From positions 185,348-249,347 of the IMG/VR virus record IMGVR_UViG_3300046507_000667: 64,000 bases of DNA; one strand, 5' to 3'. The notes under the pieces are model-generated. The model ran no database searches. It saw only the letters and a list, made by a program, of their open reading frames with translations, and had not been told where the DNA came from. The position numbers were made by a program, and so were the translations under genes. Every line of letters begins with the position of its first letter. The stretch's first letter is position 1. This document shows positions 6,572-13,002 of this stretch, in pieces.

Positions 6572-6811
6572 TTAATAGATTACTGGATTCAAATGACCAC
6601 TAAGTGATCCAGTTTTCTCAATAGACTCTGCAAATACTGAAAGATCATCGATATACCGGCCATCATAATTTGTGGCAGCAATACCATCTTCAGACCGAGC
6701 ATAAACTTGGAAGATCTCACCTTTCTTATAGACACCATCGTCTTTTTGAAAACGTACTTTTTCACCGATAATGATTGTATTAAGGTCAGCAAGTTTCACA
6801 GCATACTCCAA
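6572..6811 (-). CDS. Hypothetical protein
   Basis: 79-aa ORF after an ATATATTAT motif, upstream of the AAA gene. Confidence 0.65.
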   Translation of the reverse strand: MEYAVKLADLNTIIIGEKVRFQKDDGVYKKGEIFQVYARSEDGIAATNYDGRYIDDLSVFAESIEKTGSLSGHLNPVIY

Positions 6812-6903
6812 TTTATTGAAATTAGGATATTATACAAAAACTATACTAAATATTTCATTAAAATAATATATTCATAATTTAGTTTTTATATTTTCTCATG
6901 CCA

Positions 6904-6915
6904 AACAATTACTTA
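6904..6915 (+). promoter_or_regulatory. Late-type promoter AACA-N6-TA
   Basis: AACA ATTACT TA upstream of the lysis cluster; fits the AR9 nvRNAP consensus AACA-N6-TR. Confidence 0.5.
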
Positions 6916-6975
6916 GTAGTCCTTCACCCAAAAGGTGTTGGAGCAGTTTAATAAGCAATAACATCGGGGCTAGAA

Positions 6976-7299
6976 ATGGATTTGTCCTTGGGTAGAATCT
7001 TAGATGAACTCGTCAATGGTGGACATTCTGCCATTTTGTCGATCGTATTATTAATTGCCGTTATTCTTGGTAATGAAGTTCGTATTTTACGAAAGGAAAG
7101 ATCTTCCCTTTTAGAGCAACAGCTCGCCGATAAAGAAAGACATTTCAAGGCTCTTGATGATTTGAAACAGAGTACCATTGTAAGAAATGAAGAAATGTTG
7201 ACGAAATATCAGGAAGCTTTAAGTAACTCTAATAGAAATTCGGAAAAGGTAAAAGAGATGCTTTCTAACTTAATCATGTTTTTAACGTTGAAGAAATAA
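6976..7299 (+). CDS. Single-TM coiled-coil membrane protein, holin-like
   Basis: Hydrophobic AILSIVLLIAVILG followed by a charged coiled coil; first gene of the lysis-type cluster. Confidence 0.55.
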   Translation: MDLSLGRILDELVNGGHSAILSIVLLIAVILGNEVRILRKERSSLLEQQLADKERHFKALDDLKQSTIVRNEEMLTKYQEALSNSNRNSEKVKEMLSNLIMFLTLKK

Positions 7300-7311
7300 G
7301 GATACCAATGT

Positions 7312-8337
7312 ATGAAATTACCAGACACGGTGTCCAAGGTCTTTGACTTAGTTCAAAGTTTTAAAAATAGGAATAAGAAAAAAATCGAGCCTATTGATTA
7401 TGATGCTTATATGGCAGACTTTCAACGGGAATTAGCAGCATCAGAGAGAAAAGTAGCTGAAAAGCTAGGAACTCAAAAGATATTGCAAGAATTCCATTCA
7501 GTCCATAAGCAAATTGACAATTTGGTTGAATATTTAGGGGAGTGTCTTGTTAATGTTGTAGACACTGAAAATATTCAGAGTGATGATGCCGCAGCAATGA
7601 ATATGCTGAATATTCTAAACTCATCGACCGACTCTATTATAGTTTGTGGCGTAAGTGGTACTATCATTTACGCTAATGCATTAGCTGAACGTCTTCTTCA
7701 AATGTCAGTATCAGAACTTCGTGGTTCTAAAATTACTGAACTATTTCCAGAACGACATGAAGATACATGCAACAGGCTAACCAACCGCCTAGCTGACATT
7801 TCTAAGCAGTTAACGACCAAATCCTTAGATATGTCTGACCAGAATGGTCGCCAAGTTACAATCGTCAACAAAGAAGGAATTGAAATTCCTGTATCAATTA
7901 AGGCATCTACAAACCGACTAAATGGTCAATCAGTTATTTGCTATGCAATTAATCAGATTCCAGTAGTTACCTCTATTATGAGGTCAGAAGCTAGATCTAT
8001 TGAGCAGATTATTAATTCAACTCCAACCAAAGATGGTCTTATTCTTATTAAAGAAGGTAAGATTGTTGGCATGAATGAAACACTACACACCAAACTCTGT
8101 AAAGATATTATGCTAGAGCAATTACGTTCTATGCATGTATTTTATTTATTTCCAAAGAATATTATCAAGGAAATAATGAAGGAGTTTAAGAACCGTTCAT
8201 TAAACACAGTAGTTGCTATTACGGCGGCTAAGGGTAAAATGAATGTAGTCTTGGATGAATACATGCTCAATGGTGATTATGTAAGACAAGTTAAGATTCT
8301 TAACTTAGTTGAACAAGATATTGATTTTGCTATTTAA
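7312..8337 (+). CDS. PAS-domain protein without a recognisable output domain
   Basis: ILNSSTDSIIVCGVSGTIIYANALAERLLQMSVSELRGSKITELFP is a typical PAS N-terminal signature; a second degenerate PAS starts at IINSTPTKDGLILIKEGKIVGMN. Confidence 0.75.
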   Translation: MKLPDTVSKVFDLVQSFKNRNKKKIEPIDYDAYMADFQRELAASERKVAEKLGTQKILQEFHSVHKQIDNLVEYLGECLVNVVDTENIQSDDAAAMNMLNILNSSTDSIIVCGVSGTIIYANALAERLLQMSVSELRGSKITELFPERHEDTCNRLTNRLADISKQLTTKSLDMSDQNGRQVTIVNKEGIEIPVSIKASTNRLNGQSVICYAINQIPVVTSIMRSEARSIEQIINSTPTKDGLILIKEGKIVGMNETLHTKLCKDIMLEQLRSMHVFYLFPKNIIKEIMKEFKNRSLNTVVAITAAKGKMNVVLDEYMLNGDYVRQVKILNLVEQDIDFAI

Positions 8338-8381
8338 TTAGCCCGCGCCGTAGTAACTAACTTCTCGTAAGGAAATCAAAA

Positions 8382-8753
8382 ATGGAAGATAATACAGGCT
8401 CAGTAGAAGTCGTTGAATCAAAGAGATCTTTTCTCGAAACACTTAAATCACAATTCCGTCTACCAGAGATTCAAATTAATTGGTGGAAAGAATTGATTTT
8501 TGCAGTTCCAGTAATCGCTCTAGTATGGGTTGCTCTCCATAATGATGCACCAGCATTTGCCGGTCTTCTAAATGGTGTAGCAGTTTCAGTAGGAAGCTTT
8601 TGGGTTGCTCATGTTGTTCGTAAGCTATTCATTCCTGAGTTTTCTATTACTCGCCTATATCTTAAAGCTGCTGAAGATCCACTCGCATCTGCTGTAACAC
8701 TCTTTGGTATCTTTTATATTACAGGTATCATTGTAGCTGCTGTACACCAGTAA
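8382..8753 (+). CDS. Multi-TM membrane protein, putative holin
   Basis: Three hydrophobic segments; immediately upstream of the transglycosylase. Confidence 0.6.
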   Translation: MEDNTGSVEVVESKRSFLETLKSQFRLPEIQINWWKELIFAVPVIALVWVALHNDAPAFAGLLNGVAVSVGSFWVAHVVRKLFIPEFSITRLYLKAAEDPLASAVTLFGIFYITGIIVAAVHQ

Positions 8754-8762
8754 TTTAGTATT

Positions 8763-8793
8763 CCCCTATACTCCTTAAAAGGGTGTATAGGGG
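8763..8793. terminator. CCCTATAC-family hairpin terminator
   Basis: CCCCTATAC...GTATAGGGG after the holin-like gene. Confidence 0.8.
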
Positions 8794-8822
8794 TTTACAA
8801 CTTATTGTAAAAAACTTCAGGA

Positions 8823-8834
8823 AACACTGGAGTA
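8823..8834 (+). promoter_or_regulatory. Late-type promoter AACA-N6-TA
   Basis: AACA CTGGAG TA between a terminator and the endolysin gene. Confidence 0.5.
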
Positions 8835-8893
8835 ATGAGGGTTGACGGGGACAAACAAGTTCAAGTTAAATTTTTATGTAAGAGGTATTTAAG

Positions 8894-9676
8894 ATGAAAA
8901 AGAAATTAGTAGTACTAGCATTTATTGGGGCTGCTATTTCTGTTTTCGCTCCTAAGTCAAAAGCATATGATGTCATTAAAGACACAGCTTTTCAAAGGAA
9001 TTTTCCAGTATTTAAGCAAGCTTTAAGTAAAGATTGGCCCGACCAAAAGAAGGCAGCTGCATATTTTGCAGGTCAAGCTGAACAGGAATCTTGTGCTTCA
9101 CAAAGCAAATGTTGGAATGAGAAGACAGAAGCTTTTAGCTATGAAGCCATGAAATCAGGCAAAGCTAGAGAATATGGTTTCGGGATCTCACAGATTACCA
9201 TCACCAAATCCTTTGATAATTTCACTGCTCTAAAGAAAGCTAATTCAAACCTAAATGGTTGGACTTTTGATAAGCGTTTTGATGCTGGTTATCAGTTCAT
9301 TGCGATGTTTACCTTAGATCGTCAATGTTACAACCAAGTAAAATTTGCAACTACAGATTATGATCGCTATGCTTTCATGTTCTCTTGTTACAATGGTGGT
9401 TATGGTGGTATCCTTAAAGATCGTGCAGTATGCCGTGCTACCAAAGGTTGTGATCAAGACAAATGGTGGGGACATGTAGAGAAGACTTCTACAAAGTCTA
9501 AAGTACCATCAAAGATCTATGGCGGTCAAAGCATGTTCGATATTAATCGTGCATATCCAAAAAATATCATGCAATTAAGATCGAAGAAGTATGAGCCATT
9601 ACTTCAAGACTATATCAATCCAGAAAAGCCTTCTGGAGCAGCAACTAAGATTGCTTCTACAACAAAAGCAGCATAA
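8894..9676 (+). CDS. Lytic transglycosylase (SLT-like) endolysin with N-terminal signal/SAR sequence
   Basis: MKKKLVVLAFIGAAISVFA signal; catalytic QES, REYGFGISQIT, YNGG, DRAVC..GCD..WWGHVE, INRAYPKNI. Confidence 0.8.
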   Translation: MKKKLVVLAFIGAAISVFAPKSKAYDVIKDTAFQRNFPVFKQALSKDWPDQKKAAAYFAGQAEQESCASQSKCWNEKTEAFSYEAMKSGKAREYGFGISQITITKSFDNFTALKKANSNLNGWTFDKRFDAGYQFIAMFTLDRQCYNQVKFATTDYDRYAFMFSCYNGGYGGILKDRAVCRATKGCDQDKWWGHVEKTSTKSKVPSKIYGGQSMFDINRAYPKNIMQLRSKKYEPLLQDYINPEKPSGAATKIASTTKAA

Positions 9677-9681
9677 TTAAA

Positions 9682-9711
9682 TCCCTATACCCTCGAAAGA
9701 AGGTATAGGGA
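9682..9711. terminator. CCCTATAC-family hairpin terminator
   Basis: TCCCTATACCCTCGAAAGAAGGTATAGGGA followed by a T-rich tract. Confidence 0.85.
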
Positions 9712-9825
9712 ATTTTACGTATTAATGCAATATTTAGTGATATATTATTTGAATGGAATACGAATAGCCATCCGTCGCTATTTGTTGACTGCAATAATTC
9801 TTCTAATTAGGAAAAGGAAAAAGAA

Positions 9826-10344
9826 ATGCCGATCGTGAATTCGAAACCCATGCAGTCGATGCAGTACATGTCGTTTGAATGGGTAATTCACCAGATGGAA
9901 TACTCCGGTCATGTGTTTTATCTGACTGGTAGCCGTGCATTTGGCGGTGCTCGCATTGATTCGGATTGGGATTACTTCACGGAAAACACCGATGAAGTTG
10001 TCAGCCTTCTGAAGCAACTGAACTTTGTTGAGATCAGTAACATGGTAGAATACCATCGTGACAATCAGATCTCTCGTGTGTTTGAACTGGTTACACAGGA
10101 TGCCAAGCACATCCAAGTCCAACTAGTTCGTGACGTCATTGCGAAGAATGAGATTCAGGACACTCTTCTCAATGGTGAAATGCGTGAAGTTCTTCTCAAT
10201 ACTCCGAAAGATCAACGTTCGATCATTTGGAATCTTGCTTACGATGGTTACATGAAAGGCAAGCATCGTGCTTATCGTGAGCAAGCTGAAGAACGCGCAC
10301 GTCTGAAAAAGCAACAACGTCAAGACGAATTCGTGGTAAGTTAA
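9826..10344 (+). CDS. Small Pol-beta superfamily nucleotidyltransferase
   Basis: YLTGSRAFG-x5-SDWDY motif; own promoter motif and terminator. Confidence 0.75.
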   Translation: MPIVNSKPMQSMQYMSFEWVIHQMEYSGHVFYLTGSRAFGGARIDSDWDYFTENTDEVVSLLKQLNFVEISNMVEYHRDNQISRVFELVTQDAKHIQVQLVRDVIAKNEIQDTLLNGEMREVLLNTPKDQRSIIWNLAYDGYMKGKHRAYREQAEERARLKKQQRQDEFVVS

Positions 10345-10354
10345 ACGAATTGAA

Positions 10355-10385
10355 TCCCTATACCTTCTTTATGAGGGTATAGGGA
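10355..10385. terminator. CCCTATAC-family bidirectional terminator
   Basis: Between convergent ORFs ending at 10344 (+) and 10409 (-). Confidence 0.85.
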
Positions 10386-10408: not shown

Positions 10409-10732
10409 TTACCTTACTCGATAAGGCTTTTGAGTAAGAGTACCATAACCTACAGATTTTTGCATATAACTACGAAGACGTGCTTTCTTTTCTTCAATAT
10501 CTTGACGATTGCCAATACGTGAAGTATCAATGCCTGTTTCTTCTAGTAATTCGAGTACAGCTAATTGGTCGTTAATTTCTCTAATACATCGATCAATATT
10601 GGTACCTTGATCCGGATTAGCTGGATCTACGTTATCTTCACCAAAACGAGCAATCTTACCGACAGCTTGTGATGTTTCACCTGCTTCTTCAGATAAACAC
10701 GTCCAGAGTAGTTCTTTATAGTTCATGTGCAA
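10409..10732 (-). CDS. MazG-like NTP pyrophosphohydrolase
   Basis: LSEEAGETSQAVGK...REINDQLAVLELL, matching the EExxE...ExxD pattern. Confidence 0.75.
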   Translation of the reverse strand: MHMNYKELLWTCLSEEAGETSQAVGKIARFGEDNVDPANPDQGTNIDRCIREINDQLAVLELLEETGIDTSRIGNRQDIEEKKARLRSYMQKSVGYGTLTQKPYRVR

Positions 10733-11643: not shown

Positions 11644-13002
11644 TTATCCTTTCACAATAAGAAGTTTGGATACTGCTCGGGTACAGGCCGTATATAACCA
11701 ACGTCGATGAAACGCTTGGTCGCCTAACCGTTCCTCATATACCATCAATTTGTCATATGATGAACCTTGAGATTTGTGGCAAGTAATGCAGTAGCCAAAA
11801 TCCATCTGATAGATATTTTCTTCTTTAGTAAAACCACCGACAATATGAGGTTCATCCTTGTACTTAGTGTACATATTGTCACGAGGAAGAATGGCCTTTA
11901 TTAGACGTTCTTCACCATTATCGCCTCTTAACCTAATAAAATGACGATGACTTTCACTTTGAGCTAAATTAGAATAGTCTTCACCAGAAGTCCATTGTTG
12001 ACCATTGAATACCATATACATCTGTACATTTGACAGACCAATGAGCTTTTCACCCATATATGGCATCTTTTTAACATCATACCCATGTACTTTACGCATA
12101 TGAGTATTGACATTCTTACGAGTCTCATTCTTACCACAAATAATCTGATCAACATACTTCATCATCTTATCAGTGATTTCATCAGCAGATGCTTTAAAGA
12201 CACCGGGACCATATTGACCAAATGGAATCGGTTTACCTTCTCGGATATCTAATGAAAGTCTAATAATTGGTGAGTCTAATGCCTGACGATGGATTTCAGT
12301 AAGCCTATCTTCAGCTTTAACCATGAAATCCTTATCATCAGGATCATTACTAATAGCAGGTAACTGACCTGAGTCACCTACATAGAGTACAGGGATACCG
12401 AATGATTCAATATCCTTACGCATCTTGCTATCGACCATTGATGCTTCATCAACGACGATTAATGAATAAGCATTTCGTACATCATTAGCTGAACGACGTA
12501 CAAAGATTGGCATCATTGCAGATGGATCTTCTAATTCATAGAAAAGCGAATGGATACTGGTAGCTTCAACACCACGCTTTTGAAGAACAAGAGCAGCTTT
12601 CCATGTGAATGTACACACTGCAATATTCTTTTCCTTCATATACGAAGGAAAGGTTTCTTGTGCCGTATTCAAGAAGTATGAGATAACAGCAGTCTTACCA
12701 GTACCAGCAAAACCTGCTAGACGCCTAAATGGAGTACGAGAATTTGGATTCTCATATAACCATTTAAGGATATTTTTTACTGCACCATATTGTTCATCAG
12801 ATAGAGTAAGGTTATACTCTGGTAGCTGAAGAACACGAGTCATCTTACCAAAATCAAAAGTTTCAGTAGGATTATAACTACCATAGGGTGATAGAACATC
12901 TTCTATCTTGAAAGATGCACTACCTTCAAAGAATTTAGCTTCAATATCTCTATTAGCATTCTTATTGACCTTTGGCATTATAGGTAGTGGTTTCAATACC
13001 AT
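11644..13002 (-). CDS. dda: SF1B helicase (Dda/RecD-like)
   Basis: AGFAGTGKT, TSIHSLFY, IVVDEASMV, VGDSGQLP, LTEIHRQ, YCITCHKSQGSSY, YTACTRA. Confidence 0.88.
   Translation of the reverse strand: MVLKPLPIMPKVNKNANRDIEAKFFEGSASFKIEDVLSPYGSYNPTETFDFGKMTRVLQLPEYNLTLSDEQYGAVKNILKWLYENPNSRTPFRRLAGFAGTGKTAVISYFLNTAQETFPSYMKEKNIAVCTFTWKAALVLQKRGVEATSIHSLFYELEDPSAMMPIFVRRSANDVRNAYSLIVVDEASMVDSKMRKDIESFGIPVLYVGDSGQLPAISNDPDDKDFMVKAEDRLTEIHRQALDSPIIRLSLDIREGKPIPFGQYGPGVFKASADEITDKMMKYVDQIICGKNETRKNVNTHMRKVHGYDVKKMPYMGEKLIGLSNVQMYMVFNGQQWTSGEDYSNLAQSESHRHFIRLRGDNGEERLIKAILPRDNMYTKYKDEPHIVGGFTKEENIYQMDFGYCITCHKSQGSSYDKLMVYEERLGDQAFHRRWLYTACTRAVSKLLIVKG

What the first reader, a model, noticed from the sequence alone, without database searches (positions are those of the whole stretch)
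6904..9711. A PAS sensor protein embedded in the lysis cassette: possible signal-controlled lysis
Seen in sequence: a late-type promoter (6904), a single-TM coiled-coil protein, a 341-aa protein with an N-terminal coiled coil and one clear plus one degenerate PAS domain but no kinase, GGDEF or HTH output, a 3-TM holin-like protein, then a signal-bearing transglycosylase. Established: PAS domains sense small molecules, redox or light and act through protein contacts. Inference: the PAS protein may bind the neighbouring membrane proteins and act as a ligand-gated holin/antiholin switch coupling lysis timing to cell state. I do not know of a described PAS-regulated phage lysis module.
Basis: partly seen in the sequence, partly recalled or inferred. 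Interest (0 to 1): 0.75.

Follow-up and report, generated by a model that had tools for sequence, protein, structure and literature searches.

The report
Phage PAS protein beside lysis genes
A soil jumbo phage encodes a two-PAS-domain sensor-type protein, always paired in its relatives with a small membrane protein, that in this phage lies directly in front of the holin-like and cell-wall-cutting genes, so signal-controlled lysis is plausible but unproven.

Summary
The four ORFs are real. They are a 107-aa single-TM/helical protein, a 341-aa protein with two PAS folds and no output domain, a 123-aa multi-TM holin-like protein, and a signal-peptide-bearing family-1 lytic transglycosylase. The "late promoter at 6904" could not be confirmed.

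The cluster is two separate modules:
- Module A is the 107-aa protein plus the PAS protein. It matches g302/g301 of Yersinia jumbo phage phiR1-37 and four metagenomic lineages, where the partner is about 210 aa with one divergent PAS-like domain. The canonical PAS (aa ~88-215) is unique to this phage.
- Module B is the 123-aa protein plus the transglycosylase. It matches phiR1-37 g290/g289, annotated endolysin.

In phiR1-37, A and B lie about 19 kb apart, separated by tail-fibre genes and terminators. Here that block is absent and no hairpin follows the PAS gene, so A looks co-transcribed with the holin-like gene. In one other lineage, module A directly abuts a SAR lysozyme.

A lysis-timing role for the pair is therefore plausible (about 0.4) but circumstantial. 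No ligand is known, the co-folding run gave no answer, and no member matches a characterised holin or antiholin significantly. Verdict: partly supported, a new variant of known kinds, moderate interest.

The parts
6856..6871 (-). Copy of the genome's oriented promoter-like motif (ATATATTAT-N5-TG). It points at the divergent 79-aa gene (6572-6811), not at the cluster.
   Evidence: Orientation statistics over 32 sites; PWM of 56 sites; exact match on the minus strand only.
6976..7299 (+). 107-aa bitopic membrane protein of the g302 family. TM at aa ~18-33, then a helical, charged tail. The positive-inside rule predicts N-out/C-in. Holin-like architecture.
   Evidence: ORF; hydropathy and charge; homologs of 107-109 aa next to every g301-like gene; phiR1-37 g302 E 1e-12; weak PHROG holin/spanin hits, E 0.005-0.07; ESM-Atlas Holin_BhlA lead.
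7312..7572 (+). N-terminal helical region (aa 1-87) of the PAS protein. Amphipathic first helix plus long helices, modelled with low confidence.
   Evidence: AF2 secondary structure and pLDDT.
7573..7956 (+). PAS1 (aa ~88-215), a canonical PAS domain unique to this phage's copy. Cys153 sits in the alignment column where 17 of 29 homologs have the His that matches FixL's proximal heme ligand.
   Evidence: Pfam above gathering; 906 HMMER hits, mostly multi-PAS kinases; nearest solved sequences are the heme-PAS domains FixL and 10jx, at weak E 0.06-0.09; column counts; only PAS_9 hit in the genome.
7984..8301 (+). PAS2 (aa ~225-330), a divergent PAS fold. This is the domain shared with the ~210-aa g301-like proteins.
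   Evidence: HMMER hits P0040, P0051, P0086 and P0134 to aa 212-337, E 2e-11 to 2e-7; alignments; AF2 pLDDT above 90 with beta2-alpha-beta3 topology; tandem-PAS Foldseek hits.
8382..8753 (+). 123-aa membrane protein with 2-3 TM segments (g290 family). Probable holin of the endolysin.
   Evidence: 41% identity to the L002 and phiR1-37 g290 proteins, always directly upstream of the LT gene; hhalign to holins annotated beside this LT family in phages MW2 and Sonora, E 4.7e-4; one member hits PHROG holin 8226, E 0.0014; ESM-Atlas nearest cluster 'putative Holin'.
8763..8793 (+). Strong hairpin between the holin-like gene and the LT gene. It is a copy of the recurrent CCCTATAC...GTATAGGG element and may act as a partial terminator or attenuator.
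   Evidence: Sequence; RNA fold -23.1 kcal/mol, z -4.1; phiR1-37 annotates a stem-loop at the same position.
8894..9676 (+). 260-aa Sec-exported family-1 lytic transglycosylase (g289 family), the probable endolysin. Signal peptide aa 1-24 (8894-8965). Invariant Glu65-Ser66, G-F-G-x-x-Q and Y-N-G-G motifs.
   Evidence: PHROG 669 endolysin, E 6e-16; family alignment; AF2 and Foldseek hits to MltF, MltC, Slt70 and MltE; 56% identity to phiR1-37 g289 'endolysin', and the family is annotated endolysin or SAR endolysin transglycosylase in 141 phage records; only copy in the genome, which has no PF00959 or PF01510 gene.
9682..9711 (+). Terminator-like hairpin that closes the cluster.
   Evidence: Scan; fold -18.5 kcal/mol, z -5.1.
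9740..9755 (+). Exact copy of the oriented promoter motif serving the next gene (9826-10344). It marks the start of a new transcription unit.

Best explanation
SHOWN. The cluster joins two evolutionarily independent modules of phiR1-37-like jumbo phages.
- Module A is 6976-8337. It is a conserved bicistron: a 107-aa bitopic membrane protein (g302 family) and a cytoplasmic protein with a helical N-terminus and a divergent PAS domain (g301 family). In this phage the soluble partner carries an extra canonical PAS domain.
- Module B is 8382-9676. It is a holin-like membrane protein (g290 family) and a signal-peptide-bearing lytic transglycosylase endolysin (g289 family).
- In this genome the variable tail-fibre block that separates A and B in phiR1-37 is missing. 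So is the hairpin that ends module A in phiR1-37 and L007. The 107-aa, PAS and holin-like genes therefore appear to be one transcription unit, followed by hairpin, LT gene, hairpin.

INFERRED. The 107-aa protein inserts N-out/C-in. Its cytoplasmic helical tail docks the helical N-terminus of the PAS protein, forming a membrane-tethered cytoplasmic sensor. This pair acts on the timing of membrane permeabilisation. One reading is that the 107-aa protein is a BhlA-like holin or co-holin gated by the PAS partner. Another is a cytoplasmic antiholin-type regulator comparable in logic to T4 RIII. Either way it sets when the exported transglycosylase is unleashed. The added PAS1 would give this phage an extra small-molecule or redox input.
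For: - The pair is adjacent in every lineage found: the window, L006, L007, L009/L010 and phiR1-37, with L008 cut at its end.
- Synteny with phiR1-37 runs g305-g304 | g302-g301 ... g290-g289-g286-g285, and g291-g300 have no homolog in this genome.
- A terminator or hairpin follows g301 in phiR1-37 and the 214-aa gene in L007, but nothing follows the PAS gene here.
- In L006 the stop of the 217-aa gene overlaps the start of a SAR-type T4-family lysozyme. That is the position a holin/antiholin normally holds.
- K+R counts are 0-2 before the TM and 4-5 after it in all five family members. This predicts a cytoplasmic tail.
- There are weak full-length PHROG 'holin' hits for 2 of 5 members and an ESM-Atlas Holin_BhlA lead.
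- The PAS protein has no signal peptide or TM, so it is cytoplasmic.
- The LT is the only plausible soluble endolysin in the genome.
Against: - In three lineages the pair is followed by virion or tail-fibre genes, not lysis genes.
- In phiR1-37 the pair is an autonomous unit about 19 kb from g290/g289.
- No member has a significant match to a characterised holin, antiholin or spanin.
- A dedicated holin-like gene already accompanies the LT.
- Co-folding of the pair gave no answer.
- phiR1-37 RNA-seq places g302/g301 in the 'constitutive' class at low to moderate levels, not in a distinct late class (PMC4848604 Table S2).
- No ligand is identified.
Confidence: 0.4

Rival explanations
1. Module A is a membrane-associated sensor or regulator with a function unrelated to lysis, such as superinfection exclusion, host take-over signalling or control of another membrane process. 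Its position beside the holin/endolysin here is a by-product of losing or relocating the tail-fibre block. The extra PAS is a lineage-specific accretion.
For: - A and B are separated by about 19 kb and by terminators in phiR1-37.
- L007 and L009 show the same A-then-tail-fibre order.
- Relatives of module B lack any PAS gene.
- The pair is not annotated as structural or as lysis-related in phiR1-37.
- Uncharacterised stand-alone PAS proteins occur in other phages without any known lysis link.
Against: - A second, independent juxtaposition exists with an unrelated exported muralytic enzyme (L006 SAR lysozyme, overlapping codons).
- In the window the pair appears co-transcribed with the holin-like gene.
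- The 107-aa protein has holin-like architecture.
Confidence: 0.35
2. Module A helps tail-fibre or virion morphogenesis at the membrane. It would be an assembly factor heading the tail-fibre operon, not a lysis regulator.
For: In phiR1-37, L007, L008 and L009 the genes immediately downstream are tail-fibre or virion structural genes in the same orientation.
Against: - The window's genome keeps the pair although the phiR1-37 tail-fibre block has no homolog there.
- A terminator separates g301 from g300 in phiR1-37.
- PAS plus a TM anchor is not a known chaperone architecture.
- g301 and g302 are not flagged as virion proteins in the phiR1-37 record.
Confidence: 0.1
3. The 107-aa protein is an i-spanin (Rz-like: N-terminal TM plus periplasmic coiled coil), placed upstream of holin and endolysin as in YuA-like phages. 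The PAS gene is an unrelated insertion.
For: - Weak PHROG Rz-like spanin hits, E 0.04-0.07.
- In phages MW2 and Sonora the same LT family is preceded by i-spanin then holin.
Against: - No lipobox ORF (o-spanin) in any plus-strand frame of 6700-9900.
- The positive-inside rule predicts the opposite topology in all family members.
- hhalign to the Sonora i-spanin finds nothing, E 0.89.
- A separate spanin-like trio (TM-coil protein, membrane protein, lipoprotein) lies at genome 1.9-3.1 kb.
- The conserved partner of the 107-aa protein is a cytoplasmic protein.
Confidence: 0.05

Closest known systems
Yersinia jumbo phage phiR1-37 genes g302/g301 and g290/g289
   Same: - g302 is homologous to the 107-aa protein (E 1e-12, full length).
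- g290 is 41% identical to the 123-aa protein.
- g289, annotated endolysin, is 56% identical to the LT.
- Flanking genes are the same: the g304 ATPase and the g286 Dda-like helicase.
   Different: - g301 is 210 aa with one divergent PAS-like domain. It is not detected by Pfam PAS_9 and matches only weakly.
- The two pairs lie about 19 kb apart with tail-fibre genes and terminators between them.
- All four phiR1-37 proteins are functionally uncharacterised. g289 is only annotated.
T4 lysis-inhibition system (holin T with antiholins RI and cytoplasmic RIII)
   Same: The logic is alike: a small bitopic membrane lysis protein whose triggering is modulated by a separately encoded partner, including a cytoplasmic one (RIII). 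This comparison rests on my own knowledge; T4 lysis inhibition is also invoked in PMC4848604.
   Different: No sequence or fold relationship was found. RIII and RI have no PAS domain. In T4 the signal is superinfection sensed in the periplasm, not a cytoplasmic ligand.
BhlA-type holins (Pfam Holin_BhlA) / PHROG 9316 'holin'
   Same: About 70-110 aa, a single N-terminal TM, and a helical charged C-terminal tail. ESM-Atlas feature similarity is 0.91. PHROG 9316 E is 0.005-0.008 across nearly the full length.
   Different: No Pfam Holin_BhlA hit, even at E up to 10. The similarity falls below any significance threshold. BhlA proteins are known from Gram-positive prophages.
Holin-LT endolysin cassettes of YuA-like phages (Bordetella MW2, Stenotrophomonas Sonora)
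   Same: The LT endolysin family is the same (38-42% identity). It is preceded by a ~111-115-aa three-TM holin that aligns to the g290 family by profile (E 4.7e-4).
   Different: Those cassettes begin with i-/o-spanins. They have no PAS gene and no g302-like gene.
VqmA-Phage of vibriophage VP882
   Same: A phage-encoded PAS-domain receptor that couples a small-molecule signal to the decision to lyse (PMC8284805, listed).
   Different: VqmA-Phage has a DNA-binding HTH output and works transcriptionally in a temperate phage. The protein here has no output domain and is paired with a membrane protein in a jumbo phage.
FixL / DosP-type heme PAS sensors
   Same: They are the nearest solved relatives of PAS1 by sequence (1d06 FixL at E 0.057; 10jx heme-PAS at E 0.086) and are among the top structural matches.
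   Different: The E-values are weak. The proximal-His column holds Cys153. There is no kinase or phosphodiesterase output. Heme binding is untested.

Membership tests
PAS domain superfamily | Match to a Pfam PAS-clan model above the gathering score | tested here: met
   PAS1: PAS_9 35.5 vs 27 bits, PAS 34.4 vs 22.6, PAS_4 27.2 vs 23.1. PAS2 is not detected by Pfam.
PAS domain superfamily | Five-stranded antiparallel beta-sheet flanked by helices (beta2-alpha-beta3 order) | tested here: met
   The AF2 model has this topology in both domains at pLDDT above 90. Foldseek hits to tandem-PAS structures reach E 1e-12.
PAS domain superfamily | Bound cofactor or ligand (heme, flavin, other) | not testable with these tools
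   The only lead is that Cys153 replaces the FixL-type proximal His.
phiR1-37 g302/g301 gene pair | Sequence homology of the small membrane protein | tested here: met
   BLASTP E 1e-12, 28% identity over the full length. Metagenomic members are 29-33% identical.
phiR1-37 g302/g301 gene pair | Homology of the soluble partner | tested here: met
   Metagenomic members match aa 212-337 at E 2e-11 to 2e-7. For g301 itself the match is weak (E 2e-4 pairwise; hhalign E 0.001 and 0.06).
phiR1-37 g302/g301 gene pair | Conserved position, divergent from the MoxR-like ATPase | tested here: met
Holin (functional class), 123-aa protein | Small membrane protein encoded directly upstream of the endolysin in relatives | tested here: met
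   Seen in the window, L002, L003/L004 and phiR1-37.
Holin (functional class), 123-aa protein | Significant homology to a characterised or curated holin family | tested here: inconclusive
   No Pfam or PHROG hit for the window protein. Family-level hhalign E 4.7e-4 at probability 33%. One member hits PHROG 8226 at E 0.0014.
Holin (functional class), 123-aa protein | Charged cytoplasmic C-terminal tail | tested here: not met
   The protein ends two residues after the last hydrophobic segment.
Holin (functional class), 107-aa protein | Lethal, timed membrane lesion that releases or activates the endolysin | not testable with these tools
   Only architecture and context are available.
Family-1 lytic transglycosylase (SLT/GH23-like) endolysin | Lysozyme-like alpha-helical fold with a catalytic Glu-Ser motif, G-x-x-Q and Y/A-N-x-G motifs | tested here: met
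   Invariant E65 (with S66), G95-F-G-x-x-Q100 and Y166-N-G-G. Foldseek hits to MltF, MltC, Slt70 and MltE.
Family-1 lytic transglycosylase (SLT/GH23-like) endolysin | Match to Pfam SLT (PF01464) | tested here: not met
   No Pfam hit. The PF01464 genome scan finds only the 2096-aa virion-type ORF. PHROG 669 'endolysin' matches at E 6e-16.
Two-component spanin (Rz/Rz1) | Adjacent, overlapping or embedded outer-membrane lipoprotein gene | tested here: not met
   No lipobox ORF in any plus-strand frame of 6700-9900.
Two-component spanin (Rz/Rz1) | N-in/C-out topology with a periplasmic coiled coil | tested here: inconclusive
   The positive-inside rule favours N-out/C-in in all five members. This is a prediction only.
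One-component PAS transcription factors (e.g. VqmA-Phage) | DNA-binding output domain | tested here: not met
   No HTH or other output domain by Pfam or in the model.

The most novel reading that the evidence does not exclude
phiR1-37-like jumbo phages carry a previously unrecognised lysis-control device: a BhlA-like single-TM holin or co-holin whose cytoplasmic tail is held by a PAS-domain partner acting as a ligand- or redox-gated cytoplasmic antiholin. In this rhizosphere phage the device has gained a second, canonical (possibly heme- or thiol-based) PAS input and has been fused transcriptionally to the holin/exported-transglycosylase pair. Lysis timing would then be set by the metabolic state of the infected cell.
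Probability: 0.2. Interest if true: 0.8.

Novelty: new variant of a known kind. Interest (0 to 1): 0.5.

Why it matters
How phages set their lysis time in response to host physiology is understood for only a few systems, such as T4 lysis inhibition and quorum-sensing switches in temperate phages. No sensor-domain protein is known to act directly on a holin.

This work defines a small, conserved and uncharacterised gene pair, a membrane anchor plus a PAS-type protein. One member, phiR1-37 g302/g301, is in a cultivable phage, so the hypothesis can be tested directly.

Even if the pair proves unrelated to lysis, it would be a phage-encoded membrane-tethered PAS module of unknown role. The analysis also gives a holin/endolysin assignment for phiR1-37-like jumbo phages, where lysis genes are poorly defined.

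Tried and rejected
- Megablast and tblastn of the region, the PAS protein, the 107-aa protein and P0051 against the phage collection found nothing.
- The word-index search found no close homolog of the PAS protein. The same search with the ~210-aa family profile recovered only known members.
- IMG/VR and JGI metagenome scans with the PAS protein, the LT and the family alignments A1 and A3 gave no confirmed locus.
- I tested whether the 216/220-aa proteins upstream of the holin-like gene in L004 and L002 are PAS-protein homologs. They are not. They follow a tail fibre and look like fibre-associated genes.
- A profile search of the LT family against PDB sequences gave only insignificant MltF hits. 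The fold search settled its identity.
- Complex prediction for the PAS protein plus the 107-aa protein returned 'no answer' and is not used as evidence.
- Pfam scans of the 107-aa family gave no Holin_BhlA hit, and scans of the ~210-aa family gave no PAS hit.
- PAS1 as a recent duplicate of PAS2 is rejected: 24% identity over 41 aa, E 0.02.
- I could not reach the full L007 and L009 contigs to locate their endolysins, because those records are not held.
- No sigma-70-type promoter faces the cluster, and no plus-strand copy of the phage motif does either.
- Sequencing-run search: the region is held by several rhizosphere metagenome DNA runs and no RNA run is shown to hold it.


Full report
**What the window is**

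The window is the last 64 kb of a 249,347-bp IMG/VR virus record with direct terminal repeats. The same sequence occurs in several rhizosphere metagenome DNA runs. GC content is about 35%. Its closest cultured relative is the Yersinia jumbo phage phiR1-37.

**Checking the observation**

The four plus-strand ORFs exist exactly as described: 6976-7299 (107 aa), 7312-8337 (341 aa), 8382-8753 (123 aa) and 8894-9676 (260 aa).

The 341-aa protein:
- It passes four Pfam PAS-clan models above gathering over aa ~100-209, and nothing else matches. There is no kinase, GGDEF or HTH domain.
- An AlphaFold2 model was built on a composite alignment of family C-terminal domains and PAS segments of the best HMMER hits. 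Its mean pLDDT is 83.
- The model has a poorly defined helical N-terminus and two confident PAS-topology domains, aa 88-215 and ~225-330.
- Foldseek's best PDB hits are all tandem-PAS proteins (PpsR, DosP, FixL PAS-A/B, CLOCK/BMAL1, HIF/ARNT), aligned over 250-340 columns.
- This is the only PAS_9 match in the genome.

The 107-aa protein has one strongly hydrophobic segment and a helical tail. The 123-aa protein has two strong and one weaker hydrophobic segment.

The 260-aa protein:
- It has a classical signal peptide, with an A-x-A|Y-D/N-V site conserved among relatives.
- It has invariant Glu65(-Ser66), G-F-G-x-x-Q and Y-N-G-G motifs.
- It models at pLDDT 86.5 as a family-1 lytic transglycosylase. 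MltF, MltC, Slt70 and MltE are the top hits.
- It matches PHROG 669 'endolysin' at E 6e-16.

The one element I could not confirm is the 'late-type promoter (6904)'.
- Words around 6904 are not over-represented in the genome.
- The genome has one very sharp promoter-like element, TTAnRR-ATATATTAT-N5-TG. It has 56 sites, with TG at fixed spacing in 55 of them.
- That element is strictly oriented. It never occurs in the 'wrong' orientation between co-directional genes.
- The spacer has one exact copy (6856-6871), but on the minus strand, serving the divergent 79-aa gene. No plus-strand copy with up to 2 mismatches faces the cluster.
- A further exact copy at 9740 serves the next gene. It lies just after a strong hairpin at 9682-9711. 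The cluster's downstream boundary is therefore well defined, while its promoter is unknown.

**What the four genes are: two modules**

The PAS protein has no close homolog among 5.8 billion proteins or in the phage and IMG/VR collections. An exhaustive HMMER search gave 906 hits.
- Almost all are multi-PAS sensor kinases that match aa ~85-215 (PAS1).
- Four small proteins of 205-217 aa match only aa ~212-337 (PAS2), at E 2e-11 to 2e-7.
- On their contigs each of these is immediately preceded by a 107-108-aa gene. The one exception is L008, whose contig starts 60 nt upstream of the gene.
- Those products are co-linear homologs of the window's 107-aa protein, at 29-33% identity.

In phiR1-37 the same pair is g302 (109 aa; E 1e-12) and g301 (210 aa). 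g301 matches only weakly, through its N-terminal motif and the first strands of a PAS-like domain. The pair is placed divergently from the MoxR-like ATPase g304, as in the window.

The conserved unit is therefore 'small bitopic membrane protein plus cytoplasmic helical/PAS-like protein'. The canonical PAS1 is an addition unique to this phage. It is not a recent copy of PAS2 (E 0.02).

The other two genes form a second unit.
- The 123-aa protein is 41% identical to the protein directly upstream of the LT homolog in L002 and to phiR1-37 g290.
- The LT is 56% identical to g289, annotated endolysin. It belongs to a family annotated endolysin or 'SAR endolysin transglycosylase' in 141 phage records.
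- By profile-profile comparison the g290 family aligns across all hydrophobic segments with the holins annotated beside this LT family in phages MW2 and Sonora. The E-value is 4.7e-4 at probability 33%, which is suggestive but not conclusive.
- One g290-family member hits a PHROG holin at E 0.0014.
- The genome has no T4-type lysozyme or amidase_2 gene. Its only Pfam-SLT and M15 domains sit in giant virion-type ORFs at 117-123 kb. The 260-aa LT is thus the best endolysin candidate.

**How the two modules relate**

In phiR1-37 the order is g304 | g302-g301-terminator-g300...g291 (about 19 kb of tail-fibre genes)-g290-stem-loop-g289-terminator-g286 helicase. L007 and L009 also have virion or tail-fibre genes after the pair. 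L002 has a tail fibre before its g290/g289-like pair.

In the window's genome g291-g300 have no homolog at all, while g305, g304, g302, g290, g289, g286 and g285 are co-linear. Module A's own terminator hairpin is present in phiR1-37 and L007 but absent here: the 44-nt spacer after the PAS gene does not fold (z +1.0). The first strong hairpin comes after the holin-like gene at 8763-8793 (-23 kcal/mol, z -4.1).

In this phage the pair therefore seems to be transcribed together with the holin-like gene. The 'PAS protein embedded in the lysis cassette' is a lineage-specific juxtaposition, not a conserved cassette.

One further lineage (L006) points the same way. There the 217-aa gene's stop overlaps the start of a T4-family lysozyme with a Gly/Ala-rich N-terminal SAR-type segment. 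That is exactly where a holin/antiholin would be expected.

**Mechanism (inference)**

- All five 107-aa family members have 0-2 Lys/Arg before the TM and 4-5 in the 15 residues after it. This predicts N-out/C-in, so the helical tail would be cytoplasmic.
- The PAS protein has no signal peptide or TM and is therefore cytoplasmic too.
- Relatives begin with a conserved amphipathic helix followed by G-x-G-G.
- The 107-aa protein resembles single-TM holins in architecture, but only weakly in sequence. PHROG 9316 'holin' scores E 0.005-0.008 for 2 of 5 members. There is an ESM-Atlas Holin_BhlA lead and no Pfam support.
- I consider it most likely (about 0.4) that the pair forms a membrane-tethered sensor that modulates membrane permeabilisation, and thus the action of the exported LT. 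PAS1 would add an extra input.
- Co-folding gave no answer.

On the ligand:
- The nearest solved sequences to PAS1 are the heme-PAS domains FixL and 10jx, at weak E 0.06-0.09.
- The column holding the FixL-type proximal His in 17 of 29 aligned homologs is Cys153 here, with His149 one turn earlier.
- Which FixL histidine is the proximal ligand rests on my own knowledge of FixL.
- This is a lead for heme or thiol chemistry, nothing more.

**Rivals**

- A non-lysis membrane function, with accidental adjacency (0.35).
- A role in tail-fibre or virion morphogenesis (0.1).
- The 107-aa protein as an i-spanin (0.05). Several findings weigh against this:
  - No lipobox ORF lies in the cluster.
  - The predicted topology is the opposite one.
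  - hhalign to the Sonora i-spanin finds nothing.
  - A spanin-like trio lies elsewhere in the genome.

**Literature**

- The phiR1-37 RNA-seq study lists g302, g301, g290 and g289 in the 'constitutive' class at low to moderate read counts, with a sigma-70-type promoter upstream of g302. It notes that lysis control in this phage is unexplained (PMC4848604).
- The 2026 receptor-binding-protein paper does not mention these genes.
- PAS proteins are present in other phages, including Atu_ph07, Bacillus phage G gp214 and stand-alone PAS proteins of uncultured phages. All are uncharacterised.
- The studied example is VqmA-Phage of VP882, which has an HTH output (PMC8284805).

**Verdict**

The conserved partner of the PAS protein is the single-TM protein, and a lysis role is plausible but rests on context in two of six lineages. 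I rate it a new variant of known kinds, with interest 0.5.

Noticed in passing
window 3694, 6856, 9740, 17469, 19447, 23247, 25230, 26534, 26619, 31931, 32794, 40118, 43939, 46045, 49623, 50441, 55878, 58731 (exact sites): A sharply defined, strictly oriented promoter-like motif, TTAnRR-ATATATTAT-N5-TG. It has 56 sites genome-wide, almost all intergenic, with TG at fixed spacing in 55 of 56. It is probably the phage's own promoter class, comparable to the 'PHIRE' promoters annotated in phiR1-37.
   Followed up: partly
window 8763-8793, 9682-9711, 10355-10385: A recurrent hairpin with a conserved stem, CCCTATAC...GTATAGGG. The 8-mer GTATAGGG occurs 57 times in the genome counting both strands. 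It marks gene or operon ends. Two near-identical copies flank the 172-aa ORF 9826-10344, which also has its own promoter motif and so looks like a self-contained inserted unit.
   Followed up: partly
L019:391-810, 821-1243, 1246-1593 (genome 1890-3092, outside the window): A spanin-like trio: a 139-aa N-terminal-TM/coiled-coil protein, a 140-aa DUF3307 membrane protein (PHROG 2470, E 6e-27) and a 115-aa lipoprotein with an L-L-T-G-C lipobox. These may be the phage's i- and o-spanins. No profile confirms this.
   Followed up: partly
L020:503-700 (-) (genome 25102-25299): A 65-aa proline-rich lipoprotein candidate (V-L-T-A-C lipobox), reminiscent of an Rz1-type o-spanin. Its neighbours show no TM/coiled-coil partner.
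   Followed up: partly
whole genome vs phiR1-37: The phiR1-37 tail-fibre block g291-g300 has no detectable homolog anywhere in this genome, while the flanking genes are co-linear. The receptor-binding apparatus has evidently been replaced wholesale, which fits a different (rhizosphere) host.
   Followed up: partly
L011 (genome ~123.0-123.3 kb) and L015 (genome ~117.2-117.4 kb): A Pfam SLT domain inside a 2096-aa ORF and a Peptidase_M15_3 domain inside a 430-aa ORF. These are probably virion-associated cell-wall-degrading proteins used at entry, like phiR1-37 g083/g084.
   Followed up: no
window 7768-7770 (Cys153 of the PAS protein): Cys occupies the alignment column where most PAS1 homologs have the His that matches FixL's proximal heme ligand. 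His149 lies four residues upstream. This may indicate thiolate-heme or redox-thiol chemistry, or loss of cofactor binding.
   Followed up: partly
window 10409-10732 (-) and 11644-13002 (-): A MazG-like NTP pyrophosphohydrolase (PHROG 4856, E 9e-13) and a Dda-like helicase (55% identical to phiR1-37 g286) lie just downstream of the cluster. phiR1-37 is reported to carry dU-substituted DNA (title of PMC12697855, seen). I did not examine whether this phage does too.
   Followed up: no
phiR1-37 g331 (PMC4848604 Table S2): phiR1-37 has a second 'lytic murein transglycosylase' gene, g331, that is expressed early at very high level. It is not a member of the g289 family by profile. Whether this phage has a counterpart was not tested.
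   Followed up: no
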